Below, in pieces: positions 26,179 to 43,296 of a stretch of 64,000 nucleotides of DNA. The number at the start of each line of letters is the position of its first letter. The first letter of the stretch is position 1. The DNA lies in IMG/VR virus record IMGVR_UViG_3300007735_000804, positions 124,001 through 188,000 of that record. One strand, 5' to 3'. Made by a program: the position numbers and the translations under genes. Below the pieces are notes generated by a model, which was not told the origin of the DNA, ran no database searches, and worked only from the letters and a program-made list of their open reading frames with translations.

Positions 26179-26811
26179 TTAACTATTTATTGGTCTGTTG
26201 ATCTGATAAACTTTCGGAATATATGTATCAATAGTTGCTTGTATATCAAAACTTTTACCTTTTCCAATTTTCAGATATTTGCCAAAATTGAGACTGGTAA
26301 AACTTTCATCTTCTGAACTCTTATATGCTATTGTGTTTGGTTCCGAATCATATATTGGATTTGTAATCCAAATATCTTTTTCGTTATCAACAAGATTAAT
26401 TGTCTCCCCTGTTGATATTTTAATTTGCTCACCATTTAAAGTTATGGGCGTATTAAAACAGACCCAATCAATTCCTTCATCTACATTTGTAGTAAATAAA
26501 GTATCCATATGTACAGAATAACACCATTTTGTATTATCTTCTAATGCTGTTATTAGTATTGCTTTTTGCGGTCTTCTATTAAAACAATCACCGGCAGATA
26601 CAATACCCGATGCATTACTATCAATTTCTCGACAATTAAGACTACCACTAGTTACAAAAGTACATCCATAATCTTCTATTTGATTGTCATCACCAATTGG
26701 AATTTTTGATAAGTCGCATGTAATAAATATTTCTCCTTTATTCATATTCCAATAAGATGTGCATAATTTATTTTTACTATCCCTAAATCTTTTAAATTCT
26801 ACTGGTTGCAT
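26179..26811 (-). CDS. hypothetical protein, possibly cupin-like
   Basis: TFVTSGSL...AGDCF...ITALEDNTKWC; coupled to the adhesin gene. Confidence 0.6.
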   Translation of the reverse strand: MQPVEFKRFRDSKNKLCTSYWNMNKGEIFITCDLSKIPIGDDNQIEDYGCTFVTSGSLNCREIDSNASGIVSAGDCFNRRPQKAILITALEDNTKWCYSVHMDTLFTTNVDEGIDWVCFNTPITLNGEQIKISTGETINLVDNEKDIWITNPIYDSEPNTIAYKSSEDESFTSLNFGKYLKIGKGKSFDIQATIDTYIPKVYQINRPINS

Positions 26812-27707
26812 TATGCTACCCCCCCTAATCTAATTCCTTCTACTAGCCAAGTTGCATAACCACTATTAACTATATAGTTTCCTCCAGATCCTCCATTGCC
26901 CCCATTGCCCCCATTGCCGTCGGTGCCCTTATTACCGCTAGATCCAAGATCTCCACCACTACCCCCAGTTCCTGATTCAGCTCTTCCGCTGTTAGAACCG
27001 CCACCACCGGCGCCGCCACTGACAAGAGTTCCACTATTGCCATCATTACCACCAGATCCACCGTTACCCGCATCATATCCTGCACCACCTCCGCCACCTC
27101 CACCATCGGAAGTATCAGTATAGCAATCTTGAGTAAAACAAGATTTAGGTATACAATAGTTTTGATATCCATATCCACCAGCGCCACCGCCACCGCCACC
27201 GCCTGCTATAGTACCATTGTTTGTAATAAAGGTGGATAATAAAAGTGTTAGAGCTGGACCACCATTACCTCCAGCATCACCATTTGTATTTCCTCCATTA
27301 CCACCTTTTCCAACAATAAAGTTATTGTTTATTAGGTATAATGAAGATCCTGCAGGAAATGTTCCAGTATCAAAAGCAGTTGATGTAGTGCTAGTAGATC
27401 CTATTACTCCATTCACCGTTACATATAATTTAACGGGTAAATTATTACTTACAATTGTTGCAATTGATTTGTACCCCCCAACAACAGATGCATTTGAAAG
27501 ATCAGAATATGCATTATAGTTTTGATTTGTACCTATTGTTCTCGTAGCGTTGATAATCTTTCCATAAAAATTAGAAAATTTTATAGGACCACTATTTGGA
27601 ATGCCTGCATCTAGTCCATAATAATTTGATAGAGATACTGGACTAGCAACACCAAATTCATCAGTTATTTCAGTAAAAGAAAGTTGCCCAGAAGATTTAA
27701 TAGTCAT
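26811..27707 (-). CDS. Gly-rich tail-fibre tip adhesin (T-even gp38-like)
   Basis: [12 protein letters not shown]...SLSNYY...P.SG.I..SNFYG N-terminus; polyglycine C-terminus; follows an S74 fibre. Confidence 0.7.
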
Positions 27708-27712
27708 TCTTA

Positions 27713-30700
27713 TTATTTCTTGTTAATTGACTTTTTTAAATCATCAATTTCAGTTTTTAAATCTTTAATTGCCTCAATCAGAAGTGGCACGAGTTTCTCA
27801 TAACGAACTGCAAGATAACCATTTTCTCTAGATGTAACTGCTTGAGGTAAGACTTCAAGAATTTCTTGTGCAACAACACCAATATCACTACCTTCCTTAC
27901 CAGATTCATTGTTCCAATCAAAGGTATTGCCACTAATTGAAATGACTTTCTCAAGCGCATCTGGAATTGGGGTAATATTATCCTTAAGTCTTTGGTCTGA
28001 AGTATAAAATGCGGTAATATCACCAGTTACATTTAAAGCACCATTAACTTGTGTTGAAGCATTAAACAACTGCAGAATTGTATTGTAAGATCCAGCACCA
28101 TTCTTAACATTAAATTGGATTTGACCACTATTTGTGGTGTTATTAATTCCAAATACACCATCACCACCACCATCACTATGAAGATCTCCTTGTCCGGCGC
28201 CACTAGAGTTAATGTTTAAGGCATTTACGGAGGTGCTGCCAGAAACAGATAGAGTGCTTGAGAGTGTCGTAGATCCAGTGACATTCAATGTAGAATTGAA
28301 TGTGGATATTCCAGTTACATTTAGTGTTGAATTAAGTGATGTTGCTCCAGTAACGCCCAATGTAGAACTTAATGTTGTTGCTCCAGTAACGCCTAATGTA
28401 GAACTTAATGTTGTTGCTCCAGTAACGTCCAATGTAGAACTTAATGTCGTTGCTCCAGTTACATTTAAGGTCCCACCAACATTTAGATTTTTACCAATAC
28501 CAACTCCACCCGAAATAATTAAGTTTCCAGTTGTGGTTGAAGTTGATTGCGACCCTTGTGTTAGACGAACTATATTGTTAAAAGTAGATAGTGCTTTTAT
28601 TCTCAACTCTTTGTTGAAGGTGACAGGACCATCAAATTGAGAAAGAACCGCGCCAGATACACCACCTTCAACTAGAAGTCTTTCTTTAACAGTAACTTCA
28701 TCAAATACAACACTGAGTTTATTTGGGTCTTGACCCGTTACTGTTGGATTTGGAATGTCATAAGAAATAACTTCTCCGCTGGATGCGGAAGTTTTGGTGT
28801 TACCAGTGTAAAAATCACCATTGTTGTTCATACCTGTATAAACAACAACCCCACAAGAACGCTCTTGAGAATTTGCCAAGAAGTTTTCTTGGTCATTTAG
28901 AGTCTTAACTTGAACTTGTGGTAAACCTGTAGAATAGTTGCCAGGACCATAACCAAGATATTCAAAGGTATGTCCAGAAGCGCGAAGAATTGATGGTCTG
29001 CGGAATTCAATCGCAATTGGGTTGATTTTGCGAATTAATGAATTAGCATCATGATCTTCTTGAACTGTACCAAGAGCTCCACGAATAACAGACGCAGAAG
29101 TAGTATTATTACTACTTATAACTCTCATAATTTCATTATCAATTTGAATATAAGAACCTAGTGGTAATCTTTGTGCTGTTCCAATTCCAACACCAGTAAT
29201 ATTAATTACAGTGCCAGTGGTTAATGTAGATGTAAGTGTAAATTTATCGTTTGCATAGAAAGCGACGCTACGTGCCCCAAAGTTTTCACCCCTATCATCA
29301 GAAGTTGCTTCATTAGAACTGAGACCATGCTTTAAGATATAACCGCTTGCTGTTGCAATACCTACGTTAGTAATTGCTGTAAATGTTGTTACGCCAACCT
29401 TTTTCTCTACAATATAATCTCCAAGATTGTTGTTGTTAGAATCGATAATTCTGAATTTATTTCCAACAAGAAGACCGTGTGCAGAAGAAGTTGTAAATGT
29501 TGTAATACCAGTCGTGGATTCGGAAATTGCAGACGATAGACCAATAGAAGGTCCAACTACAAATACATATTGACTACTTAAAATTATTGGATCTCCAGAA
29601 GTTTTAGCAATTGAAATTGTAGTTGAAGATGGGACAGATGTAATTCTGTAATAACCATCAGATGTTGTTCCAGTACCCGTAACTTGAATTACATCATTAA
29701 TATTGGTGGAAATACCTGCTGTAGTGATAGTATATCTTGCATTTCCATTACCAGTTCCGATTTTTGTTCTATCGAAGTGTAACCCAGTTGCTGAATAACC
29801 AGAACCAGGTGCCATAAGTTCTGCAGAAACTACACCACCACCAACTACTTCAACTTTTGCCGTTGCTCCATTCCAAGTTCCAACGGATGGATTTGAACTG
29901 CTATTTAAAAGTTTTACATTATAATAAACTCCATCATTGTAAGATGCACCTGAAGTTAGAGATGAATATGTTACAATTCCAGAAAGACCATGGAATCTTG
30001 GGAATGTAATTGTGGCAATTCCTGAAGATGATGCAATAGAACTAATTGTAAGACCAATACCTATATCTTTAAGTGTAAGGTCTGCAGTTTCTCTAGTGAT
30101 ACTGTTCTTTAAATCATTTGTATCAATCGCACCAATTGGAGAGCGTTTTGCAAAAGTTTTTGCAGATGGTGGATTATCATTTATATTATCACGATCAAGT
30201 TGTGGATATAAGTCTACTGGCAGTTGCCCATATTCAAGGTTTGTGAATAGATTTGCATTAACTGTATTGCTTGCATTTAAAACATATAAATGATATATGC
30301 CGTCTTGTTGATTGTAAATATATGGGGAAATAACTTCATTTCGGTAAATATACAAGTTTCCTTGCAAATCATTCCTCTCAAATCTTGGAAGATTTACATC
30401 TCTAGTTGTTGTAGTATCTGTAAATGTTCCTGGTGTATGCCCATTACCTTCTACATCTGTAGTTGAATATTGAAAAGTATATGCGTCGCTGATAGCAGTA
30501 ATCGCAAATCTTCCATTATAACCTTCATTGAATGTGCCACTTACATTTGAAGAACTTTTCACATTTCTGATGATTACTAGATCTCCAACTTGAAGATCAT
30601 GTGGTAATTCTGAAATAACTGTAACTGTGCTAGAAATTACAGAACAAGTTGAAATAAATCTTGGGTTTTTTAAGTAATCATAATCAGTACTCGCAATACT

Positions 30701-33214
30701 TGTTCTGGTAAAATCAGTGCTAGTTCTAATGCCAGTAGAACTAGATTCTTGAATTACAAATCCAGTTTCAGGATCTTTTGCATTTCGAAGTTCTTTTGGA
30801 ATAACAACTCTAAATTTATAAAGTTTTTCATCCAAACTTCTTTCATCTGATGTGCGCTTAATATAAGCAAGATCTGTAGTTGTTCCATATGTTGCCGTTC
30901 CACCAATACTTAAAGCATTATAAATTTGATTATTTGAATTGACATGAATAAACCAGTTTTTATTTTGTGCATCAAATTGAACTGGCGATCCAAATTCTCC
31001 AGATTCTTTATCCGAAACACGACTCAAGATATGAAGATTAGTTCCTCCCGATAATTGAATAGCTTGACCCTGAAGTGCGTTTGTATAAGAAGACGCAAGT
31101 CTGATCGTATTATTATCACCAACATTAATAGCATAATAAGTTTCATGAGCATCAATATTTTCAGGAAGATCACCATCATCACTTATAATTTTAACTTTTT
31201 CACCTGTAATAAAATTGTTAGAACCGACTGTAAATGATGTTGTAAACCCCGTGGATGGGGTTGTAGTTGCATTATAATATTTGACTGAACTTGTAGTTCC
31301 ATAAGCTGTTGTGAGTCCAGTTGCACTTATTACATTATCACACATGTAAATACTAGATTCACTTGTTCCAGTACTTAGAGGAACATATAACTTATCATTT
31401 AATTTTGCACCAATTCGATAACCTTGTGTTTGCGATGATGGTGCTGCGTCGGGGGAGTTGAATCCATAAAGATAAAGATGACTTGAGATACCAACAGAAG
31501 TTGTTAAACCAACATCTAGTGATAACCATTCAACATTCTCTTCAGATGAAACAACAGATCTTGGAGGAATGATTGACGTAATAAAAGCATTATTATCTTT
31601 ATCAAATGATTCTTTTTTAAATCCAGAAGAATTTAAAGAAATTTGTCCAAAGTTTGAGTTGGAGTTAGTGATTGAACCATCGCCACCAGACTCTGCATCA
31701 AAATGTTTATTAAAACCAATTGCGAATACAGAAACAATTTGAATGAACGCATCATTACTAATTTTAATGTGACTTGTTTCCCATCCTTGACGATAAATTG
31801 CATCTGGATCTAGATGATAAACTTGACTTGAATCTGTTTGTGATGAACCATTTGGAAGATCGGAACCAGTAACTGTGGTATAATCTATTTTTTCATAAGT
31901 TCTCGATGACTTATTATACTTTGCAAATGCACGATCATCTTTTTGAAGAGATACTGCAGTAAATTGTGCAACAACTGTGCTTCTGAAACCAGATGCTTTA
32001 CTACCATCGGCATGAAGACCATTCATACCCCATACAGAACGTAATGAGGTATTAAAGATATAAGGTGAGGCACCAGATACAGTATCAGTTTCAACGGTTA
32101 CTGTTGCACTCGCAGGACTTGGACTTGGATTAATTGTTGGATAAGATCCCAGTGCTGGTAAAAGATAAGTAAATGATGTGGAACTCTCAACACTTCTAAC
32201 TATTGTTGAAATATTATAGGGTTGAGTAACACCAGAACCACCGACTCCATTAATTTTAATAGGAGTTCCTGCATTTAATCCATGCTCATTTGATGTTGTA
32301 ACTGTAACAAGAGATGTTGCAACACTACCATTACCAGAAATAATTGAAGAGATTGAAATTGGGTCTGCAGCAAAGGCACCAACAATCTCCCACTCTGGAT
32401 TTCTCTTTGCAAACCCAAGAGGACTTCCTGGATATTTTTGAGTTATTTGACGATAAGCATTATAAGCATTACCAACCTTACTATAATACATATCAAGGTC
32501 TGTGATTCCATAAGACCCAACCTTGTTTACTCCATCACAAAACTCAAAACAAGTTAGTTTGTGATGAGAGAAATTAGGTGTAGATGTATTAATTGATCCA
32601 AAATTATCTGGATTAGTATAAACAAAACTACTTGGATCTGCATCAAATAAAGAGAATTGCCAGAAATAACAAGCACCAGTAATTCTAAAAATCGCAGATT
32701 TTGCTACAGTATCATCAGTTGGATTTGGAACATATTTTGGACGAATCTTGGTTTTTCTTAAATCGAGACCAACAATAGAGGTGCCTCTTGGAACAACAAC
32801 ACCACCATAATAACTATTAAACTTATAAAGAATATTATCTTCTTGTGTTAGATCAAAGTTAGAGTCTAATCCAAGAGAAAGAACAGAAGACGCTAAAACT
32901 CCTACACCACCTGCTCTTGAAACCGCATAAGCAGTACCACCGTTATCATAAATGGCAAAACCAGGTCTATTGTCAATTAAGTGCTCACCAGGGAACAACA
33001 GAATCGTTGTCTTCTCTGTAATATCATTATTATCTCCAGCAACATAAGAGAATCTTGCTGCTTCTAACAGTGCTCTCTGAACTGTTTTAAAAGGACGGGC
33101 AAGAGAATTACCTTCATTCTCTATACTATCTGTAGAATCAAGGTCGTTAGGATTGACATAAAGAATACGACCTTCAGTATTCTTAATAAAATTATCTAAC
33201 TTATTAAGAGGCAT
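27713..33214 (-). CDS. long tail fibre with C-terminal intramolecular chaperone (peptidase S74)
   Basis: 1833 aa; [10 protein letters not shown]...GVVAQE...[17 protein letters not shown]. Confidence 0.85.
28340..28470. repeat. 36-bp tandem repeat (12-aa [11 protein letters not shown]) in the fibre
   Basis: GTTGCTCCAGTAACGYCYAATGTAGAACTTAATGT x3 plus degenerate flanks. Confidence 0.85.
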
Positions 33215-33586: not shown

Positions 33587-33659
33587 TACCCGTGAGTGGA
33601 TTCGAACCACCGCTTGGAACATTTTAAGTGTTCTGCCTCTTCCGCTGGGCTACACGGGC
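33587..33659 (-). tRNA. tRNA-Leu(UAA), short variable arm
   Basis: GCCCGTG/CACGGGT-A acceptor, GAACA-CTTAAAA-TGTTC anticodon arm, GGTGG-TTCGAAT-CCACT T arm. Confidence 0.9.
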
Positions 33660-33736
33660 TGGTGGTCGCAGTGGGAATCTAACCCACCTTCGGCGGTTTA
33701 TGAGACCGCTGCATTCGAACAGATTGCTATACGACC
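33660..33736 (-). tRNA. tRNA with CAU anticodon (Met or Ile2), encoded CCA
   Basis: GGTCGTA/TGCGACC-A-CCA, GCGGT-CTCATAA-ACCGC, T loop TTAGATT. Confidence 0.85.
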
Positions 33737-33768
33737 TACATTCGCTATTCGCAAACAACGAATAGCAA

Positions 33769-33856
33769 TACGAGTGCCTGGATTCGAACCAGGTCAAAGC
33801 CGCTAATCTGGCGGAAAGAGTTTATAAGACTCCTCTGACTACCAAGTCTCACTCGC
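33769..33856 (-). tRNA. atypical tRNA with UAU anticodon (nominally Ile) and long variable arm
   Basis: GCGAGTG/CACTCGT-A, GGAGT-CTTATAA-ACTCT, CCGC/GCGG variable stem, CCTGG-TTCGAAT-CCAGG. Confidence 0.8.
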
Positions 33857-33866
33857 AATACAAATA

Positions 33867-34301: not shown

Positions 34302-34859
34302 TCAGGTGTCAAGTGGTTTTAAAAAATTCTCCAGAGGGCGATGGGCACCAAACATCCAAAGAATTCTGGGGATGTCTCCTTTTACTTCTGTAACATAATG
34401 TGGTTGCTCTGAAGCATAATAGCAGTGCAAATCTCCGACATTTATATCAATCAATTTTCCATCCACATATAAATTCCCACCACTTTCTGGTGCTTGCGTC
34501 ATTACATTGCATCTAAAAGTTGTCAGACCATCGGGTGATTTTGGATCTTGATGCTCATAAACATCACCTCCATTATATGTAACTGAAACAACAACTCCTT
34601 GGCTTCCGTGACCTAGAATTAAAGGATTATCTTGTAAATTCATAAATTTTCTAATTTTATCAGATATTTCGATTACATATAGTGGATATTTTTTACCTGC
34701 CATATGCATTCTACTTGTAAATCTTTTTTCATAAGCAAATTTACCTCTAGAAAGTCCAGGGGCAACCCAATGCTCTTTAATTCCTTGTAATGCAATATTA
34801 GATAATTTCTTACACTCTTCTTCAGTAAGAAAATTTCTAAAAATTTGAACCATATTCAA
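34302..34859 (-). CDS. 2OG-Fe(II) oxygenase (prolyl-hydroxylase-like)
   Basis: FLTEEEC, HQD...GG.L...H.V..V....R. Confidence 0.85.
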   Translation of the reverse strand: MNMVQIFRNFLTEEECKKLSNIALQGIKEHWVAPGLSRGKFAYEKRFTSRMHMAGKKYPLYVIEISDKIRKFMNLQDNPLILGHGSQGVVVSVTYNGGDVYEHQDPKSPDGLTTFRCNVMTQAPESGGNLYVDGKLIDINVGDLHCYYASEQPHYVTEVKGDIPRILWMFGAHRPLENFLKPLDT

Positions 34860-35596
34860 TAACCAAATCTTTCAAAATCCTTTTTATATAAATTTTTAAT
34901 TAATTCAATAGTAGTATCTGTTATATTTTTTTCTATTTTTTTAGATCCATTATGATGAGGATGTTCTCCCTTGATATTATAGTGCCCTCTTAAAAAATTA
35001 GAACATTCTTTAAGATTTTCAAGTTTAAAAATTTTTAATTTATTGTCGAGATTCACATCTAAAATATCATTCATTCCCAAAAACATTCTAGATGGATATT
35101 TTTCGGGTAATCCATTGGTAGCAAACTCTTTTACAAACTCATTAAAGTCTTTAATCTTGTATTCTTCTTCTTTTTTAGTCAAAGAAAATAATACAGATTC
35201 GTGATTAGAATTCGTACAATAATTCCAAATACTAAACAACCTATCAACAGGATTCCTTACGATTGAAAAAACTTTTTTACTGTCATGCTCAAAAATGTTC
35301 TTACAAAATCCTTGTCTAATTTCAGAAAGACGGTTGATAAAAAAGGTTTGCTCTCCAGAAATAAAATGAAGTAGTCCCCAATCATTTGAATCATCACTAG
35401 TTTTATATGTTGGGGGACATGTTACATAAGGTTGAAACCAGCAATCATCCGACTCATAATCTCTATAAGTAAACACCTTATCAGAAGTGCCGATAAAATG
35501 AGACATACTGATACTAGAAGATCTAGGTATGGGACAATACATCAACAGATCTTCATTCTCATCATTTAATTTTTGTTTTAGATCTTTTAGAATCAT
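34856..35596 (-). CDS. sulfotransferase family 2 protein
   Basis: 5'-PSB-like PIPRSSSIS, 3'-PB SIVRNPVDRLFS, C-terminal Y..DF..FGY. Confidence 0.8.
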   Translation of the reverse strand: MILKDLKQKLNDENEDLLMYCPIPRSSSISMSHFIGTSDKVFTYRDYESDDCWFQPYVTCPPTYKTSDDSNDWGLLHFISGEQTFFINRLSEIRQGFCKNIFEHDSKKVFSIVRNPVDRLFSIWNYCTNSNHESVLFSLTKKEEEYKIKDFNEFVKEFATNGLPEKYPSRMFLGMNDILDVNLDNKLKIFKLENLKECSNFLRGHYNIKGEHPHHNGSKKIEKNITDTTIELIKNLYKKDFERFGY

Positions 35597-35597
35597 A

Positions 35598-35777
35598 CTA
35601 CCACTTTCCTACAGGACACTTTTGACCAGAAAGTCTAACTTTTACAGGCATAAAGCATCCACACTTTTTACATTGACGAGTTGGTTTGAAAAAATGTTCA
35701 CATTGTAAACAGAATTTCATTCTATCGACCGCTTGGCGATTTTCATTATTTTCGGTATTTTCGTTATCCATATCCAT
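35598..35777 (-). CDS. small Cys-rich protein (CxxC...CxxCGC...CPxxKW)
   Basis: Read by hand: ...RMKFCLQCEHFFKPTRQCKKCGCFMPVKVRLSGQKCPVGKW. Confidence 0.75.
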   Translation of the reverse strand: MDMDNENTENNENRQAVDRMKFCLQCEHFFKPTRQCKKCGCFMPVKVRLSGQKCPVGKW

Positions 35778-35822: not shown

Positions 35823-36377
35823 TCAATTTGAATTATTTGATTCTGCTTCTAACTCTGCCTCTGCCTGTGCAAGAAGTTCTTCATCAGATAATGTTGTTAA
35901 AGATATCCCACCAGAAGTTAAAGGATTGTTTTCTCGTGCTTCAGTAATCAAATCCTCTACAGAAGTATTTGTTTTTTCTAAATAATCTTCTATAAAAGAA
36001 TCAAGAACGTCAAGTAATCTAGTATCACCATTTCTTGCAAGATACTTTGAAATAGAATCTAAACTGAAAGGACGATGTGATGTTCTTCCTGGAGTAAGAG
36101 GTTTTATCGCTATTCCATCTGGAGGAATTACAGGTTCTATTTTAATTGGCGTTGGATCATCAGTTTCTTTTCTTACAGAGGATCTTTCTTGACCAATATA
36201 AACATCAGGATTGCAAACATCTTCTTGTTTTTTTATAAAATCTGGATCATATTTAGATACTTCATGATCAATATCTTCTAAGCTAGCGCCAGGGGCAATT
36301 GGTACAATTGCCCAAGATCCATCTTCATATTCAACTTTAACTTGCCCTGGGGCAACATCTAAAATTTTGTATTGCAT
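35823..36377 (-). CDS. hypothetical protein (adhesin-adjacent)
   Basis: ORF track 184 aa; late-type ATAAATA upstream. Confidence 0.7.
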   Translation of the reverse strand: MQYKILDVAPGQVKVEYEDGSWAIVPIAPGASLEDIDHEVSKYDPDFIKKQEDVCNPDVYIGQERSSVRKETDDPTPIKIEPVIPPDGIAIKPLTPGRTSHRPFSLDSISKYLARNGDTRLLDVLDSFIEDYLEKTNTSVEDLITEARENNPLTSGGISLTTLSDEELLAQAEAELEAESNNSN

Positions 36378-36402: not shown

Positions 36403-37272
36403 TTATCCAACTCTTCCAAGACGAGTTCCTGTTGCGGACCAAGTAACATTGTTATCATTGACAATATAATAACCTGCTAAACCACCAGCGGCGCCAGCAG
36501 ATCCAGCAGTATAATTACCATTTGCTCCAGTTCCACCATTTCCCCCAGATACTCCAAAAGTTCCACCATTGCCACCAGTTCCCCCATTACCAGCATTTGT
36601 TCCGCCAGCAGCACCACCAGAACCATTAGTATTATTTCTTGCATATCCTTGACCTAATCCACCAGTACCCCCAGCACCTCCAGCATAATAGTTAGTCCCT
36701 GTACAAGTATCACAGCAAGTATAGCAGTTGCAGCATTGTCCTCCTTTACCACAACAATAGCAACCTCCGTCACCACAACAAGTCTGACAACAACCACAAT
36801 TGCAACACTCATGGCAATTACAATCATAGGTGTAGTTTTGATATCCTTGACCCCCAGTACCACCTTGTCCACCACCACCTCCGCCACCATAAATGGTTCC
36901 TGCGTTATTAATCGTCACTGCAGATCCTGCATAAATTGCATTTCCTCCAGTTCCGCCATTGGCAGCACCACCAGCACCCTGAATAGAACCATTATTAACA
37001 AGAATGAGACTCCCAGACATGCTTGAATTTATGTACAAAGCATAATCTGATACATTAGGAGACCCAACAACTACACCTGAATTAATAGTAAGTCTTTTTG
37101 GAACATTAGATGTCCAATATGATCCAAATAAAACAGCAACGTTTACATTAATTGTATTGGTGGCAATAGTAGCGGAAGCTTCATAATCTCCATATATTGA
37201 AGATCTTGCCGAATATATACTTCCCATGTAATAAATTTTTACAGTATTAGGTGAATAAAAATTACTAGGCAT
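36403..37272 (-). CDS. Gly-rich gp38-like adhesin with an 18-Cys insert
   Basis: L..VNNGSIQGAGG...G.IYGGGGGGG...RLG C-terminus like 26811-27707; CNCHECCNCGCCQTCC... insert. Confidence 0.7.
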   Translation of the reverse strand: MPSNFYSPNTVKIYYMGSIYSARSSIYGDYEASATIATNTINVNVAVLFGSYWTSNVPKRLTINSGVVVGSPNVSDYALYINSSMSGSLILVNNGSIQGAGGAANGGTGGNAIYAGSAVTINNAGTIYGGGGGGGQGGTGGQGYQNYTYDCNCHECCNCGCCQTCCGDGGCYCCGKGGQCCNCYTCCDTCTGTNYYAGGAGGTGGLGQGYARNNTNGSGGAAGGTNAGNGGTGGNGGTFGVSGGNGGTGANGNYTAGSAGAAGGLAGYYIVNDNNVTWSATGTRLGRVG

Positions 37273-37281
37273 ATAAGTTAT

Positions 37282-37725
37282 TTATTGTAACCCCAATAAG
37301 ATCTTTAATTCTTCAACGGTTAATCCTGCACTTTCTAGTTTTTGTTCTGGTGTCAATTGTACTTCTGGTGCATCTTCTATTAACCAACTTTCACTAGCAT
37401 TATCCCATTTAATTCTTTTTCTTAATTTTGGTTCTGGAGGATCTGGCGGTTGCTTTCTGGTTGCATTTGTCGGCAAAAAATTCGGATCATCAACCCATAG
37501 CTTCATTCTTGTATCAAGATCATACCAAGTTCCCCTATTGTCTTTAATAATCTTCCAGGATTGCCCATCAAATATTGGAATATAACCTGGAGAATAATTT
37601 GGTGCTTGAATCATCGTTGCATGTGCTGGTATTAACCATACATCTGGTTCATCTAATGGTGAAGGATCAGCAAAACCTTCAGAAGTAAAATACTTATACT
37701 CTGGGTGATAATTATAAATTTTCAT
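37282..37725 (-). CDS. tail fibre assembly chaperone (Tfa-like)
   Basis: IYNY...ADPSPLDEP.VWLIPAHAT...P...F....W....DNRG. Confidence 0.75.
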   Translation of the reverse strand: MKIYNYHPEYKYFTSEGFADPSPLDEPDVWLIPAHATMIQAPNYSPGYIPIFDGQSWKIIKDNRGTWYDLDTRMKLWVDDPNFLPTNATRKQPPDPPEPKLRKRIKWDNASESWLIEDAPEVQLTPEQKLESAGLTVEELKILLGLQ

Positions 37726-37734
37726 AATTTTAAA

Positions 37735-38205
37735 TTAAAAATAGTTTAAATTTATTACAACTCTAGCAGGAGCATCCGTACAACTAGTACCACAGTGCTC
37801 TAAATTACTATCAAAAATAACAACTCTATTTGCAACACTATTTACCTTTTTTCCATTTTTAAATTTTGTATACCCATCGCAAGTATTAAGATAAAAGACC
37901 GCAGTTTTCATATTTGGAAAATCAATATGATAATCGTGTTCTTCTATTGTTTCTGTTCTTGGATTTAAATTTGCTTTAACTCTAACTAAAGATTGTACGT
38001 TGAGTTTTTCTCTCAAGCACAAAATATTTGAATACAAATGTGTTGGTTGATCGTATTGATAAAAGCAATGTGTATTTTGATGGAATTTACTTCCAGTTGT
38101 AACAGATCCAAAAAACCAGGGAAAACTAGTCCCCATAACTAAACGACGAATCATATCAAATTGATTATGATTTAAAAAATCATCAATAATCTCAAAATTT
38201 GTCAT
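37735..38205 (-). CDS. 2OG-Fe(II) oxygenase
   Basis: IIDDFL, HID, GYTKF, NRVVIFD...H...R.VIN.NY. Confidence 0.85.
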   Translation of the reverse strand: MTNFEIIDDFLNHNQFDMIRRLVMGTSFPWFFGSVTTGSKFHQNTHCFYQYDQPTHLYSNILCLREKLNVQSLVRVKANLNPRTETIEEHDYHIDFPNMKTAVFYLNTCDGYTKFKNGKKVNSVANRVVIFDSNLEHCGTSCTDAPARVVINLNYF

Positions 38206-38232: not shown

Positions 38233-41200
38233 TCAATATTTTATGCAAGGAAGAAGTGCTAGGTTACGTGGACGAGTTTCAGATCCACCAGCGGGATCAG
38301 TTGTCCAATCAGTATAGAATGGGTTATTATCATTGTCATTTCCTGTTCTTGAACCTGGATAGTAATTTGGCAATCCAGAGTTACCATTATTTTCAGCGTA
38401 ATAAAAGTTTCTAAAATTGTGAGCATGTGATTGAATATCTTGAGATTGGAATGATCCAAAGGTTCTTCCACCATCTACACCTCTTCCACCATCCCAACCC
38501 CGAATGAATTCTCCACGCAAATCAGGAAGATTAAATGTTGTGCTACCATCACCTGCACCATAAGTAGTTCCAAGAATGGTAAACAATACAGAATACGTTG
38601 TTCTTGAAATTGCTGCACCATTACATGATAGATACCCAGTTGGAGCACTTGATGCTGCAAAATAAAATACAGATCCAGTAGGAACAACACTGCTGCCTAC
38701 TGAAGTGTCGTACCAAATGTCACCATCACAAAGACCAACTGGTTCTGTAGGTTGAACAAATCTTCTACCATATGCATTACTAGTTGACCCAATGCCAATA
38801 ATATTACCACCAGTTACTGAAATTGGATTTGGACAAGCATATCCAATTTGATTTACGGTAACGTTACCACCACCGCCACCACTAATTGAAACATTCACTA
38901 ATCCTGCAGATGGGCTTATTGCTGTAACTGCAGATCCAATGAAATTAATCGTTGTAATTCCAAGTTGAGTTCCTACAGTTGCACCTTCTTCTTGAATTGT
39001 AATTCCTGCAATGCCACCAGCACTAGATACTGATTTCCATGTCCAACCGCCAGAACCATTTGCAGTTAAAACAAAATTATTAGTTCCAGTCCCACCGCCA
39101 GAATCTTGAATGCTAGATGGTTTTATACTTGGAACAGTAAGCAAATCAGTAGAAGGGGTGTATGTAATTGCAGAATCTACAAATGCTGTGGTGATTCCAC
39201 TAGTAACACTAGACAAAACTAGATATCTAGATGAACCACTAGTATCAGTCGTTACATTAAGACTTGATGCTACTCCAATTGTAATAGTATTTGGATCAGA
39301 CCAAACAGGTGCATTACTTGTATCATTCCAAGTAAGAATTCTACCATTAGCATTTGGATCTGCTAAAAATGTGGTTGTATTTGACGCTGTTTGATATGGT
39401 ATAGAACCTGCAGCACCACCTTTAAGATTTGTAGCAATGCCAGAGTTATCAGCATAATTTGCTTTATCGACAATTAATCCAGTTGGATTGACCCAAGAAG
39501 GTGCTGAACCAGAATTATATTGAAGAAGTTGACCTGTAAGTGTTCCGTTTGATATGAATGCAGTTGTATTCGCTGCCGTCTGATAAGGTATTTGATAAGC
39601 AGCACCACCTTTAAGATTTGTAGCAATGCCAGCATTTGTAGCAATACCGGCATTATCCGCATAAGATGCTTTATCTACACTTAATCCAGTTGGATTTACC
39701 CAAGAGGGTGCTGAAGTTCCATTGGATTGTAGTAGTTGTCCTGAAGTTCCATTAGGAATGAATGCAGTTGTATTTGCTGCCGTTTGATAAGGAATTTGAG
39801 ACGCAATACCACCTTTAAGATTGGTAGCGATACCAGAGTTGTCAGCATAATTAGCCTTATCTACAGTAAGACCAGTTGGATTGACCCAAGAAGGTGCTGA
39901 ACCAGAGTTATATTGGAGAAGTTGACCTGTAGTAGATCCATTAGGAATAAATGCAGTTATATTCGCTGCCGTCTGATAAGGTATTTGATAAGCAGCACCA
40001 CCTTTAAGATTTGTGGAAATACCAGCATTGTTAGCATAGTTTGCTACGCTAAAATCAATACTTACATTAGATGCTGCTGTTACTCTACCTTTAGCATCTA
40101 CTGTCAAAATACCCACTTGAGTTGCAGATCCATAAGTACCTGCTACAACACCACTATTACTTAAAATAGTAGTAATGGTGACGTTCTGACTTCCATCAAA
40201 CGTAGTACCAATACCAACACCAATTACATCACCATCAATATCAATATTTCTTGGTGTTGCCAGTCTGGTTGCAGTATCAGCATTTCCCGAAATAGCGCCC
40301 ACGAAAGTGTTAGCGTAAACGTTATTCCATTTATTAGAAGTTGCACCTAAATTTAAAGTGCCATTTGTTGATGGAAGTACATTTCCACCAAATGTTGACA
40401 CACCAGCGATATTTAATTGTTTGGAGAATAAATTAGGTCCAGTAACTGTTGCAATACCCGCAAATGTTGATAAACCAGAAACAATGAGTTGAGATGTTGA
40501 AGTTCCGCTACCAGCTACTGTAAGGGTAGTTGTAGGGTTCGAAACATTGATCCCAAGAGAATTTGTGCTTGGATTATAAACAATTTCACTATCAACTAAT
40601 GCCGATGTAATACCACTGGTTCCACTTGATAAAAGTAAATATCTATCAATATTGGCATTATCAGTTGTTACTGTAAGACTTGATGCTGCACCAGTTAACG
40701 TTCCAATTATATTGGTAGCATAAAAATTATTCCAGCGAAATGATGGAGATCCTAAATTATAAGTGTTATCTACTGATGGAAGAATATTTCCTCCAAATGT
40801 TGATACACCAACGATTCTTATATTACCTTGAACATATAAAGATGATGTTGGATTTGCAGTTCCTATACCAATATTACCAGAACTATTAATAACTAAATGA
40901 TTTGCATTATCACTATTAGTAGCATTAAAGAAAATAGCATTATCCGCAGAAAGTAATCCAAATCTTGCTTTTTCTGTCCCTTGTCTAAAATATCTTACAT
41001 AAGTTTGATCTTGTGCTGCTAAACCTCTATCAATTCTAAAGATACCTTGTAAATGCAAACTGTCTTGTGGATTTGTGGTCCCTATGCCAAGATTATTTGT
41101 GTTGGGGTTATAAACAATCCCATCATCAGAAAGTGCTGTCGTAATACCACTTGTTTTACTAGACAAGACAAAATATCTAGATGTATTTGCATCATCTGTA

Positions 41201-43296
41201 GTTACTGTAAGACTCGATGCCGCTCCAGTAATATTGCCAATTATATTATTGACATAAAAATTATCCCAACGAAGTGATGGAGATCCTAAATTATAAGTAT
41301 TATCTGCTGATGGAGATACATTGGAACTAATTCGAGCATTAAATGTAACTGTATCACTATTAGCGTCTCCTAAAGTTACATTGCCTCCAACATTTAAATT
41401 CTTCTCAATACCAACACCACCTTCAACAACTAATGCCCCAGTATCTTTATTTGTAGACTCTGTAGTGTTTGATATTGAAGTAATACCAGAAACAACTAGT
41501 TGATCATTAATTGATGTAGTGCCGCCAGAAGAATCAATTGTTAAATTACCTGTTGTTGTATCAATTGTATTATCATTTGTAATTCCAATTTGAATATTAT
41601 CAATATATGCTCCGGCGAGAGTACTAACCCCAACTACTCTCAAATTTCTAGTAGTGGTTATACCAGAAACACCTAAAGTTGCAACTGTAGCAACTCCACT
41701 TACGGTGAAGTCTCTTGTAGATACGATTCCTGTAAAGAAACCATTTCTAGCAAAAAGTTCGTCATAAAAAACATCATCTTTTATGAATAAATCCCCACCA
41801 ACATATAAATCACCACCAGTTGTCGTAATACCACCTAAAGTTGCTAAATTAACTGCTCCACCAACATTGAGACGTTTTTCAATACCAACACCACCTTCAA
41901 CAATAAGAGCACCAGTATCTTTGTCCGTAGATTCAGTTGTATCATTGATATAAACGGCATCATTAATTTGGGTTGTTCCTAGAGCAGAATCTAAAATTAA
42001 ATTTCCTGTTAAAGTACTAATAGTATTAGTATCTAATTTGATATTATCAAAAGTTCCAACACCAGTAACGTTTAAATTATTAACATTAACTATAGATGAA
42101 AATGTTGAAACACCACTAACATTTAATTGATTAAGAGTAAGAGTTTGATAAACTTGAAGATTTTGAGTTGTTGTAAGACCAGTGACTCCTAGATCGCTAT
42201 TAATATTGACCTTTTGTAAAAAGGTTGATACTCCAGTTACATATAAATTCGTAACATCTATAGCGCCAATAAATTTTGATGCTGTTACAATACCAGCAAA
42301 ATATGCATTTGTACCAGTTATAAAACCTAATGTTGCAATACCAGATACAACAAGATTACGAGTTGTAGTTGTCCCTGTTACGCCAAGAGTTGAAACCGCA
42401 AGATTATCAACTGTGACACCGCCTCTAAAACTAGATATTCCTAAAACATCTAGTAAAACTCTTGGTTGCGTAGTTCCAATACCAATTCGATTATTGTTAT
42501 CATCAAACACAAAATTGGGAGCACCACCAATTAAACCAGCACTGTTATGAAATTGTATGTTTTGATATGTACCACCAGCACCTGCATTAATTGTTCCAGG
42601 ATTTGTCCAATTCAATCCACCAAAATTATTTTTAACTAAAATTTGAGAATTAGTTCCTGGTTGATTATTGGAATCATAAATTGTTCCAGTTAATCTTAAA
42701 TCTCCTTGAATATGAAGTTCTTGTGTTGGATTTGTGGTTGCTATACCAACCAAACCATCAAGAGTTGTAGTAATTACAGTGCCGCCAGCACCAACAAAAA
42801 TCCTATCACCAGCAGATAAGAGTCCTGTAGGTGAATCAAAAGTAAGTTTTGATGAGGTTGAAAATTCATTTGATGCATTGAATAAAAGTTCTTTATTATT
42901 TCCAGGAGCAAATACAGTAATTGTGACTGCTACACCTGGAGAACTATCAGGATTTAAATAACCTTTGGCAGAAACCGCTGCACCAACAAAATTTAATTGA
43001 GTAATACTACTCAATCCACCAGTCGGAGTTAAAACTCCATCGTCAAATACACTAATTGAACCAGGAATGATGCCACCCTGATTTATAATCCAATATCTAT
43101 CAGTCGCACCAGATCCAACAGAGGCAAGAATATATTGAGTTCCTGGGGGTATAGGCTTTGCTCCAATAGAAGATGGACCTACTAATGGATTGCCAAGATT
43201 TGGTTCTACTTCATCAGTATACAAATACTTGTATCTATCGTTGCGTAATTGTTCTTGCGGGGTTAGTCTAGTACGACCCGATAAGTAACGTGGCAT
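38233..43296 (-). CDS. tail fibre with C-terminal tail-collar domain
   Basis: 1687 aa; VPTGSVFYFA...CNG..ISRTTY..LF...GTTYG.GDGSTTFNLPDLRGEFIRG...ETRPRN. Confidence 0.85.
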   Translation of the reverse strand: MPRYLSGRTRLTPQEQLRNDRYKYLYTDEVEPNLGNPLVGPSSIGAKPIPPGTQYILASVGSGATDRYWIINQGGIIPGSISVFDDGVLTPTGGLSSITQLNFVGAAVSAKGYLNPDSSPGVAVTITVFAPGNNKELLFNASNEFSTSSKLTFDSPTGLLSAGDRIFVGAGGTVITTTLDGLVGIATTNPTQELHIQGDLRLTGTIYDSNNQPGTNSQILVKNNFGGLNWTNPGTINAGAGGTYQNIQFHNSAGLIGGAPNFVFDDNNNRIGIGTTQPRVLLDVLGISSFRGGVTVDNLAVSTLGVTGTTTTRNLVVSGIATLGFITGTNAYFAGIVTASKFIGAIDVTNLYVTGVSTFLQKVNINSDLGVTGLTTTQNLQVYQTLTLNQLNVSGVSTFSSIVNVNNLNVTGVGTFDNIKLDTNTISTLTGNLILDSALGTTQINDAVYINDTTESTDKDTGALIVEGGVGIEKRLNVGGAVNLATLGGITTTGGDLYVGGDLFIKDDVFYDELFARNGFFTGIVSTRDFTVSGVATVATLGVSGITTTRNLRVVGVSTLAGAYIDNIQIGITNDNTIDTTTGNLTIDSSGGTTSINDQLVVSGITSISNTTESTNKDTGALVVEGGVGIEKNLNVGGNVTLGDANSDTVTFNARISSNVSPSADNTYNLGSPSLRWDNFYVNNIIGNITGAASSLTVTTDDANTSRYFVLSSKTSGITTALSDDGIVYNPNTNNLGIGTTNPQDSLHLQGIFRIDRGLAAQDQTYVRYFRQGTEKARFGLLSADNAIFFNATNSDNANHLVINSSGNIGIGTANPTSSLYVQGNIRIVGVSTFGGNILPSVDNTYNLGSPSFRWNNFYATNIIGTLTGAASSLTVTTDNANIDRYLLLSSGTSGITSALVDSEIVYNPSTNSLGINVSNPTTTLTVAGSGTSTSQLIVSGLSTFAGIATVTGPNLFSKQLNIAGVSTFGGNVLPSTNGTLNLGATSNKWNNVYANTFVGAISGNADTATRLATPRNIDIDGDVIGVGIGTTFDGSQNVTITTILSNSGVVAGTYGSATQVGILTVDAKGRVTAASNVSIDFSVANYANNAGISTNLKGGAAYQIPYQTAANITAFIPNGSTTGQLLQYNSGSAPSWVNPTGLTVDKANYADNSGIATNLKGGIASQIPYQTAANTTAFIPNGTSGQLLQSNGTSAPSWVNPTGLSVDKASYADNAGIATNAGIATNLKGGAAYQIPYQTAANTTAFISNGTLTGQLLQYNSGSAPSWVNPTGLIVDKANYADNSGIATNLKGGAAGSIPYQTASNTTTFLADPNANGRILTWNDTSNAPVWSDPNTITIGVASSLNVTTDTSGSSRYLVLSSVTSGITTAFVDSAITYTPSTDLLTVPSIKPSSIQDSGGGTGTNNFVLTANGSGGWTWKSVSSAGGIAGITIQEEGATVGTQLGITTINFIGSAVTAISPSAGLVNVSISGGGGGNVTVNQIGYACPNPISVTGGNIIGIGSTSNAYGRRFVQPTEPVGLCDGDIWYDTSVGSSVVPTGSVFYFAASSAPTGYLSCNGAAISRTTYSVLFTILGTTYGAGDGSTTFNLPDLRGEFIRGWDGGRGVDGGRTFGSFQSQDIQSHAHNFRNFYYAENNGNSGLPNYYPGSRTGNDNDNNPFYTDWTTDPAGGSETRPRNLALLPCIKY
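39410..40030. repeat. about 60-aa tandem module x3-4 (TNLKGG...IPYQTAANTTAF...APSWVNPTGL.VDKA)
   Basis: Near-identical DNA copies inside the 1687-aa fibre. Confidence 0.8.

What the first reader, a model, noticed from the sequence alone, without database searches (positions are those of the whole stretch)
36403..37272. Tail adhesin displaying a metallothionein-like 18-cysteine loop
Seen: within a polyglycine gp38-like scaffold, the loop after GYQNY reads TYDCNCHECCNCGCCQTCCGDGGCYCCGKGGQCCNCYTCCDTC (18 Cys in 40 aa, six CC pairs). The paralogue at 26811-27707 has the same GYQNY anchor followed by a short 3-Cys loop ([11 protein letters not shown]). Known: hypervariable loops between Gly-rich motifs set host range in T-even gp38. 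Inference: an exchangeable knob domain, either disulfide-knotted like ultralong antibody CDR-H3 or loaded with Zn/Fe/Cu, used for receptor binding, possibly by mimicking a metal cargo.
Basis: partly seen in the sequence, partly recalled or inferred. Interest (0 to 1): 0.72.

Follow-up and report, generated by a model that had tools for sequence, protein, structure and literature searches.

The report
Cysteine-packed loop on cyanophage tail adhesin
A freshwater T4-like cyanophage has a gp38-type tail-fibre tip protein whose one swappable surface loop carries 18 strictly conserved cysteines in 40 residues, an extreme form of a cysteine-stapled "knob" common in this family; whether it holds disulfides or metal ions is still open.

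Summary
ORF 36403-37272 (-) encodes a 289-aa, 25% glycine protein. All 18 of its cysteines lie in residues 151-190, including six CC pairs.

Two metagenomic relatives (73-81% identical) keep all 18 cysteines. Their Cys codons show 22 synonymous TGT/TGC swaps and no replacements.

Across 114 family members the same insert is 12-110 aa long. Near-identical scaffolds often carry unrelated inserts. Cysteine counts are even in 31 of 34 Cys-bearing insert clusters.

My best reading is an exchangeable, disulfide-stapled receptor-binding knob, of which this is the densest known case. A metal-thiolate cluster is not excluded. "Metal-cargo mimicry" has no support.

Still open: which end of the polyglycine sandwich the loop leaves from, which fibre the protein caps, and whether it is present in virions.

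The parts
36403..37272 (-). gp38-type adhesin gene A (289 aa; stop codon at 36403-36405)
36703..36822 (-). 18-Cys core of the loop (aa 151-190): three Cys-rich runs separated by two Gly turns (GDGG and GKGGQ)
   Evidence: All 18 Cys are kept in P0001 and P0002, with only synonymous codon changes. Model pLDDT is 55-79 here.
36682..36843 (-). Whole variable insert (aa 144-197) between invariant Gly anchors. Modelled as a long beta-hairpin (strands 143-157 and 183-196) with an uncertain tip.
36475..36888 (-). Second Gly-rich extension of the beta-helix (aa 129-266), which forms most of the polyglycine-II sandwich and contains the insert
   Evidence: Invariant Gly columns. hhalign anchors aa 108-135 to S16 gp38 residues 128-157, including PGII helix 3. 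Structural match.
36937..36978 (-). First Gly-rich extension (aa 99-112), corresponding to the first two PGII helices of S16 gp38
   Evidence: S16 architecture is described in PMC6851490. The assignment is by inference.
37282..37725 (-). Tail-fibre assembly (Tfa-like) chaperone gene, 147 aa, ending 10 nt before the adhesin start
   Evidence: PHROG 105 E 6.5e-17 and PHROG 35518 E 2.5e-16. Same position in L003 and L004.
37735..38205 (-). Small 2OG-Fe(II) oxygenase-like gene between the fibre and Tfa genes (context only; role unknown)
   Evidence: PF13640, E 2.5e-4, below cut-off. PHROG 274, E 1e-47. Conserved in L003.
38233..43296 (-). 1687-aa tail fibre ending in a Collar domain and an HxH-containing tip; candidate carrier of adhesin A
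   Evidence: PF07484 Collar, E 8e-24, in the last 189 aa. The docking job gave no answer.
35823..36377 (-). Conserved 184-aa gene of unknown function directly downstream of the adhesin
   Evidence: No family hit. A 183-aa gene occupies the same position in L003.
26811..27707 (-). Second, distantly related gp38-type gene B (298 aa) with a 15-aa, 3-Cys insert
   Evidence: PF05268 at 22.1 bits against a cut-off of 25. PHROG 2056 'tail fiber protein; host specificity', E 1e-17. The only other copy in the genome.
27713..33214 (-). 1833-aa fibre-like protein ending in a Peptidase_S74 self-cleaving chaperone; gene B starts 6 nt after its stop
   Evidence: PF13884, E 1.7e-15. ORF map.

Best explanation
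This is the tip adhesin of a tail fibre of a freshwater T4-like cyanophage. It belongs to the S16/T2 gp38 structural class: a beta-helix from which Gly-rich stretches build a polyglycine-II sandwich. This branch of the family has essentially one variable element, an insert after the third polyglycine helix. That insert behaves as a cassette that is swapped between otherwise near-identical scaffolds, and it is usually held together by paired cysteines. In this phage lineage the cassette is a 54-residue hairpin-like projection whose 40-residue core is 45% cysteine. I think the most likely state on the released virion is up to nine disulfides, formed after lysis in oxic water. These would make a very compact, rigid, protease- and shear-resistant knob. 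The few non-Cys side chains, above all the variable turn at residues 167-172, would then contact the host receptor. Shown: the sequence feature, its selection, the gp38 fold, the fibre-operon context, the cassette behaviour and the family-wide Cys parity. Inferred: disulfide state, receptor contact, the host-facing position, and which fibre it caps.
Against: Nothing measures the redox or metal state. At 45% Cys over 40 residues with six CC doublets, I believe the loop is denser than any disulfide-rich mini-protein I know of (from memory, hepcidin and small conotoxins are about 32-38%). Nine intraloop disulfides may therefore be strained. The phage assembles in a reducing cytoplasm, and I found no sulfhydryl oxidase or thioredoxin in the genome. 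The parity argument comes from relatives with unrelated inserts. The model is unreliable in the loop (pLDDT 55-79). The conserved extra Gly stretch (aa 136-143) before the insert may be an additional sandwich helix. In that case the insert would leave from the end nearer the beta-helix rather than from the far tip. Pfam GP38 does not score this protein itself. The S16-type Trp-tipped attachment helices are not evident. The docking job on the neighbouring fibre tip gave no answer, which is not evidence either way.
Confidence: 0.55

Rival explanations
1. The loop is a metal-thiolate cluster of the metallothionein kind (for example two M3Cys9-type clusters, or a Cu(I) cluster). It would be loaded in the cytoplasm and carried on the virion as a structural core, or as a metal- or redox-sensitive switch for the adhesin.
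For: Cys density and motif types (CC, CxC and several CxxC) resemble metallothioneins. 18 = 2 x 9 matches the Cys count of two metallothionein beta-domain-type clusters (my own knowledge, not tested). Assembly is cytoplasmic, and no phage-encoded thiol oxidase was found. Six CC doublets are awkward for a disulfide-only fold. One phase of a 3-residue period holds 10 of its 13 positions as Cys (P = 0.03 uncorrected), which could line thiols along one ridge.
Against: No match to any metallothionein or other Pfam family at E <= 10. The PDB sequence search found only chance RING-finger hits at E about 0.9. Conserved or variable aromatics (Tyr, Trp, His) sit inside the loop, which is unusual for classical metallothioneins. 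His154 is not conserved. Related inserts have even Cys counts, often 6 or 10, which fits pairing rather than Cys4 sites. From general knowledge, thiolate clusters are oxidant-labile in oxic surface water.
Confidence: 0.28
2. The cysteines serve intermolecular chemistry. They could cross-link the adhesin covalently to its fibre or to neighbouring fibres, or undergo thiol-disulfide exchange with the host surface, as ultra-high-sulfur keratin-associated proteins cross-link.
For: Pam3 tail fibres are attached to the baseplate by intermolecular disulfides (PMC9942802). The Cys-Gly-rich composition resembles keratin-associated proteins (my own knowledge).
Against: Every Cys position is fixed and the total is even, which suggests a defined internal pattern. 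The neighbouring fibre proteins are very Cys-poor, at 0.24-0.33%, so they offer few partners. Nothing supports this directly.
Confidence: 0.1
3. The protein is not a virion adhesin. Instead it is an assembly factor like T4 gp38, or a non-structural protein, and the loop has no role in host recognition.
For: There are no virion proteomics for this family. The docking job gave no answer. The S16-type attachment domain is not recognisable.
Against: The fold is that of the adhesin-type gp38 of S16 and PP01, whose function the literature contrasts with the chaperone role of T4 gp38 (PMC6851490). A separate Tfa-like chaperone gene lies directly upstream. Cassette swapping on conserved scaffolds is the pattern expected of a host-range determinant.
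Confidence: 0.07

Closest known systems
gp38 adhesins of T2-type Straboviridae (S16 gp38, PDB 6F45; PP01 gp38, PDB 9V85)
   Different: Sequence similarity is marginal: hhalign probability 24% over 28 columns, and no Pfam GP38 hit for this protein. There is one large insert (12-110 aa) instead of five short loops of 6-10 aa (PP01 loops in PMC12892980). The insert is Cys-rich, whereas the T-even proteins have two scattered Cys. The N-terminal Trp-tipped three-helix attachment domain is not recognisable. The host is a cyanobacterium. The gene is separated from the fibre gene by an oxygenase gene and a Tfa gene.
Pam3 cyanophage tail fibre gp24 and its disulfide-linked baseplate (PMC9942802)
   Same: A cyanophage fibre with a polyglycine-II lattice domain likened to S16 gp38, and a virion with experimentally mapped disulfides.
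   Different: Pam3 gp24 is a trimeric fibre with a TNF-like domain. Its cysteines are few and attach the fibre to the wedge, and they do not form a Cys-dense receptor loop. No sequence relationship was tested here.
Stalk-and-knob ultralong CDR-H3 of bovine antibodies (analogy only; my own knowledge)
   Same: A beta-ribbon stalk is predicted to carry a small, hypervariable mini-domain, and the cysteine number varies between family members but is almost always even.
   Different: There is no homology. Diversity here comes from cassette exchange between phages, not somatic mutation. The stalk and knob are predicted at low confidence.
Metallothioneins and ultra-high-sulfur keratin-associated proteins (compositional look-alikes; my own knowledge)
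   Same: Very high Cys content with CC, CxC and CxxC spacing, and Gly-rich spacers.
   Different: No detectable sequence relationship. The loop is embedded in a folded adhesin, contains aromatic residues, and metal binding or cross-linking is untested.

Membership tests
gp38 adhesin (S16/T2 type, Pfam PF05268) | Sequence match to the GP38 family model above its cut-off | tested here: not met
   hmmscan of this protein against Pfam-A found no family at E <= 0.1. Gene B scores 22.1 bits against a cut-off of 25. However, nearly all 120 listed homologues, including P0001 at 81% identity, carry a precomputed PF05268.19 hit. The failure therefore probably reflects the model version and Gly-rich composition, not non-membership.
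gp38 adhesin (S16/T2 type, Pfam PF05268) | Central beta-helix whose two turns extend into a polyglycine-II sandwich | tested here: met
gp38 adhesin (S16/T2 type, Pfam PF05268) | Hypervariable segments between conserved Gly-rich motifs | tested here: met
   Invariant Gly anchors flank an insert of 12-110 aa. Column entropy is 2.3-2.9 bits in the insert against 0.6-1.0 in the Gly motifs. Unrelated inserts occur on near-identical scaffolds. The link to host range could not be tested.
gp38 adhesin (S16/T2 type, Pfam PF05268) | N-terminal attachment domain of three helices, each with a conserved Trp at its apex, that plug into the gp37 trimer (PMC6851490) | tested here: not met
   The model has one helix (45-54) and low-confidence strands in residues 1-36. 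The protein has only two Trp. Attachment, if any, must differ from S16.
gp38 adhesin (S16/T2 type, Pfam PF05268) | One monomer caps the tip of a trimeric long tail fibre, and the gene lies next to the fibre gene | tested here: inconclusive
   Gene A lies three genes after the 1687-aa fibre gene, and gene B directly after the 1833-aa fibre-like gene. The docking job (fibre tip x3 plus adhesin) returned 'no answer'.
Metallothionein | Recognisable metallothionein family signature | tested here: not met
   The 50-aa loop alone matched no Pfam family at E <= 10.
Metallothionein | High Cys content in CC/CxC/CxxC motifs with few aromatic residues | tested here: inconclusive
   Cys is 45% of 40 aa, with six CC doublets. 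However, Tyr172 and Tyr184 lie inside the loop, and P0001 has Trp and P0002 has His there.
Metallothionein | Binds metal ions through thiolate clusters | not testable with these tools
   Needs ICP-MS or spectroscopy.
Diversity-generating retroelement target | Reverse transcriptase and a template repeat of the variable region in the genome | tested here: not met
   No RVT_1 match and no second copy of the loop DNA in the 213-kb genome.

The most novel reading that the evidence does not exclude
The virion displays a genuine metal-thiolate (metallothionein-like) cluster at the business end of a tail-fibre adhesin. Metal occupancy or redox state would then gate receptor binding, coupling phage infectivity to the trace-metal or redox chemistry of the water. 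A weaker but still new version: the loop forms a nine-disulfide mini-domain denser than any known knottin-like fold.
Probability: 0.25. Interest if true: 0.85.

Novelty: new variant of a known kind. Interest (0 to 1): 0.6.

Why it matters
Host recognition by T4-like cyanophages is poorly understood, and these adhesin-like genes are filed as hypothetical proteins. This work gives a concrete candidate host-range determinant with a simple architecture: a conserved polyglycine scaffold carrying one swappable, cysteine-stapled cassette. It also supplies an extreme member that could serve as a model. If the loop is disulfide-knotted, it would be among the most cysteine-dense folded units known, and a natural stalk-and-knob display scaffold. 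If it is metal-loaded, phage adsorption could depend on trace-metal or redox conditions, which would matter for cyanobacterial bloom ecology. I found no description of such inserts in the searchable literature.

Tried and rejected
- **tblastn against GenBank phages:** the protein found nothing. A family member (P0075) hit only the N-terminal domain of Rhizobium phage proteins. So no cultured-phage relative or proteomics link was obtained.
- **PDB sequence searches:** the protein, the family profile and gene B gave only Gly-linker or chance hits.
- **Loop-only homologue search:** only P0001 was returned.
- **Back-translated loop motif scans:** the 11-residue motif found nothing in IMG/VR or JGI metagenome contigs. 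A shorter 7-residue motif gave 25 hits in IMG/VR, all out of frame or chance.
- **ESM Atlas search with the loop:** only weak, uninformative leads.
- **Docking of the adhesin on three copies of the fibre tip:** the verdict was 'no answer', so it is not used as evidence.
- **Thiol-oxidising enzymes in the genome:** neither Erv1/ALR nor thioredoxin was found.
- **Diversity-generating retroelement:** rejected.
- **Tandem DNA duplication as the origin of the loop:** tandem repeats lie only in the Gly-rich motifs, not in the loop.
- **3-residue periodicity of the cysteines:** suggestive only. P = 0.03 before correction for four periods, and lag statistics are not significant.
- **The downstream genes of the two adhesin copies:** they are not homologous to each other.
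- **Position of the insert on the sandwich:** I could not decide whether it leaves the far or near end, because no model coordinates are returned and the Gly-rich sequence aligns to S16 only around helix 3.

Full report
**What is in the sequence**

The ORF at 36403..37272 on the minus strand encodes 289 residues. It has 71 Gly and 18 Cys. Every Cys lies between residues 151 and 190 (window 36703-36822), and there are six CC doublets.

The gene at 26811..27707 (-) encodes 298 residues, with GYQNY at residue 180 followed by three Cys. The clustering is not chance. A union bound for all 18 Cys falling in one 40-residue window is 1.6e-15, and the other 18 ORFs of the operon average 0.64% Cys.

The two window genes are the only copies in the genome and are distant relatives: 40% identity over residues 43-170 by tblastn, and little similarity by composition-corrected BLASTP.

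**Whose genome it is**

The window is bases 124001-188000 of a 213,274-bp IMG/VR virus record judged complete, with 38% G+C. It carries psbA (E 1.7e-87) and a T4-type major capsid protein (E 1.4e-154). It is therefore a T4-like cyanomyovirus.

The gene's DNA is held by river, lake, freshwater and sediment metagenomes as well as viral metagenomes. The habitat is therefore inland water rather than the open ocean. The only GenBank phage match near the locus is a 98-nt tRNA-like gene shared with the freshwater Synechococcus phage S-SRM01.

**What the protein is**

- **Sequence families.** Pfam does not score this protein, and gene B falls just under the GP38 cut-off (22.1 against 25 bits). PHROG 10745 (unknown function) matches at E 3e-40, and gene B matches 'tail fiber protein; host specificity'.
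- **Homologues.** A search of 5.8 billion proteins found 644 homologues. Nearly all of the 120 listed carry a precomputed PF05268 hit.
- **Profile alignment.** Profile-profile alignment to the two T-even proteins is weak (probability 24%). It does place residues 108-135 on S16 128-157, that is, the ring before and including polyglycine helix 3.

The beta-helix plus polyglycine-II sandwich described for S16 gp38 (PMC6851490) is therefore present. The N-terminal part is different. S16 uses three helices with Trp at their tips, whereas this protein has one modelled helix and only two Trp.

**Gene context**

All genes lie on the minus strand of a long structural operon. The order is:

1. A 1687-aa fibre ending in a Collar domain (PF07484, E 8e-24).
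2. A small 2OG-Fe(II)-oxygenase-like gene.
3. A tail-fibre-assembly (Tfa-like) gene (PHROG 105, E 6.5e-17).
4. The adhesin, 10 nt further on.
5. A 184-aa unknown, a 59-aa Cys-containing protein and a sulfotransferase.

The same order occurs on the contigs of the two closest relatives (L003 and L004). Gene B starts 6 nt after a 1833-aa protein that ends in a Peptidase_S74 self-cleaving chaperone.

A separate Tfa-type chaperone stands beside an S16-type fold, which argues that this protein is the adhesin type and not an assembly factor like T4 gp38. I tried to dock the adhesin on three copies of the fibre tip, using alignments for both. The tool's verdict was 'no answer', so I draw nothing from it.

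**Is the loop selected?**

Yes. P0001 (81% identical) and P0002 (73%) keep all 18 Cys.

| Comparison | Cys codons: synonymous / non-synonymous | Non-Cys loop codons: replacements |
|---|---|---|
| Window vs P0001 (L003) | 10 / 0 | 4 |
| Window vs P0002 (L004) | 4 / 0 | 9 |
| P0001 vs P0002 | 8 / 0 | 8 |

In this lineage the insert is more conserved than the non-Gly scaffold: 84% against 65%, and 74% against 57%.

Contigs from independent samples show the same picture. A river metagenome contig spans the gene with a single codon change, GAC to AAA at 36769-36771 (D168K). That is the residue both relatives have. Lake and sediment contigs are identical over the parts of the loop they cover.

Variation concentrates in the first Gly turn and its neighbours (residues 167-172). 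The C-terminal half of the loop (175-190) is almost invariant. I take 167-172 as the likely exposed apex, by inference.

**Family pattern**

In the 114-sequence alignment the Gly-rich motifs are nearly invariant. The segment between Gly143 and Gly198 ranges from 12 to 110 residues (median 72) and has the highest column entropy.

Of 417 sequence pairs with more than 60% non-Gly scaffold identity, 305 have under 30% insert identity. P0059 and P0062, for example, are 97% identical in scaffold and 22% in insert. No pair shows the reverse pattern. The insert is therefore a cassette exchanged among scaffolds. The genome has no reverse transcriptase and no template repeat, so this is not retroelement-driven diversification.

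Cysteine is a family habit. 96 of 114 inserts contain Cys. The commonest counts are 8, 6, 10 and 12. The count is even in 88 of those 96 inserts and, after clustering inserts at 40% identity, in 31 of 34 Cys-bearing clusters (binomial P = 8e-7).

The window protein and its two relatives are the densest, at 33% of the insert against 21% for the next. P0003, the next-nearest scaffold, has 8 Cys. Four sit on each flank of the insert, in the same local motifs as here, around an unrelated middle. This suggests a conserved stem with a replaceable tip.

The exact loop is very rare. A loop-only search returned only P0001, and back-translated motif scans of IMG/VR and JGI metagenome contigs found nothing real.

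**How it most likely works**

The even counts, often 6 or 10, point to paired cysteines (disulfides) as the family rule rather than Cys4 metal sites. Disulfides in cyanophage tails have experimental precedent in Pam3, whose fibre also has a polyglycine lattice (PMC9942802).

My preferred model is a beta-ribbon stem (modelled strands 143-157 and 183-196) carrying a densely cross-linked tip. The tip would be oxidised after lysis and would present a few variable side chains to the receptor.

Several points weigh against certainty:

- Cys density of 45% with six CC doublets exceeds that of the disulfide-rich mini-proteins I know.
- Assembly takes place in a reducing cytoplasm.
- No phage sulfhydryl oxidase or thioredoxin was found.
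- The parity argument is borrowed from unrelated inserts.

A metal-thiolate cluster therefore stays a live rival at about 0.28. The loop matches no metallothionein or any other Pfam family, and its internal aromatics are atypical for metallothioneins. A weak 3-residue periodicity of Cys (P = 0.03, uncorrected) is noted but not relied on. Nothing bears on 'metal-cargo mimicry'.

**What remains unsettled**

- **Redox and metal state of the loop.**
- **Where the insert sits on the sandwich.** S16 and PP01 have a far-end receptor loop directly after helix 3 (PP01 loop B, Q161-V170; PMC12892980). The length of the remaining Gly-rich region (70 against 63 residues) fits the same topology. However, this family has an extra, nearly invariant Gly stretch (136-143) before the insert. 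If that stretch is an additional sandwich helix, the insert would emerge at the end nearer the beta-helix. No coordinates were available to decide.
- **Which fibre the protein caps, and how**, given the different N-terminus.
- **Presence in virions.**

**Verdict**

The gp38-like scaffold and the exchangeable-loop reading are supported. The chemistry of the loop is open, with disulfides favoured, and the metal-mimicry idea is unsupported. I rate it a new variant of a known kind and moderately to highly interesting.

Noticed in passing
window 33587-33857 (-): A cluster of three tRNA-like genes (Leu-taa, Met-cat, and a 90-nt call as Ile-tat that Rfam does not confirm) sits between the two fibre modules. 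The third is the only stretch of the locus shared (98% over 98 nt) with Synechococcus phage S-SRM01.
   Followed up: partly
window 37735-38205 (-); L003 723-1199: A small 2OG-Fe(II)-oxygenase-like gene is conserved between the fibre gene and its Tfa chaperone. It might modify the fibre or adhesin. PHROG 274 labels the family 'DNA endonuclease V', which looks like a misnomer.
   Followed up: no
window 34856-35596 (-) and 35598-35777 (-); L003 3204-4145: A sulfotransferase (PF03567, E 3e-10) and a 59-aa protein with CxxC...CxxCxC spacing (zinc-ribbon-like) are conserved just downstream of the adhesin in the tail-fibre operon.
   Followed up: no
window 27713-33214 (-) and 26811-27707 (-): The 1833-aa fibre-like protein ends in a Peptidase_S74 intramolecular chaperone that is normally cleaved off. 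The second gp38-like gene starts 6 nt after its stop, which suggests it may cap the newly exposed fibre end.
   Followed up: partly
window 38236-38802 (-): The Collar-plus-HxH tip of the 1687-aa fibre belongs to a huge family: 61,447 representatives at E <= 0.001. It often occurs several times per protein, in proteins of up to 4,800 aa.
   Followed up: partly
window 36769-36771: A river-metagenome contig carries the same gene with a single codon change, D168K, in the first Gly turn of the Cys loop. This is a charge reversal at the position that also differs in P0001 and P0002.
   Followed up: yes
window 36625-36869: One contig of run X19 joins these two points with GAG in between, skipping 243 nt that include the whole insert. 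The matching side is only 21 nt, so it is probably another gp38-like gene with a minimal insert rather than a deletion variant.
   Followed up: no
family alignment A1, N-terminal 60 columns: Many family members begin with a conserved module (MPLPCPGP...) that has two Cys and also occurs at the start of Rhizobium phage 'receptor recognition' proteins. Gene A lacks it and has short repeated strands instead. The attachment end therefore looks modular as well.
   Followed up: partly
family inserts, e.g. P0013, P0030, P0041, P0062: A second, unrelated insert type (10 members in A1, mostly 12 Cys, typically five CC doublets) also has a CC-dense core. Very Cys-dense cassettes may therefore have arisen more than once in this family.
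   Followed up: partly
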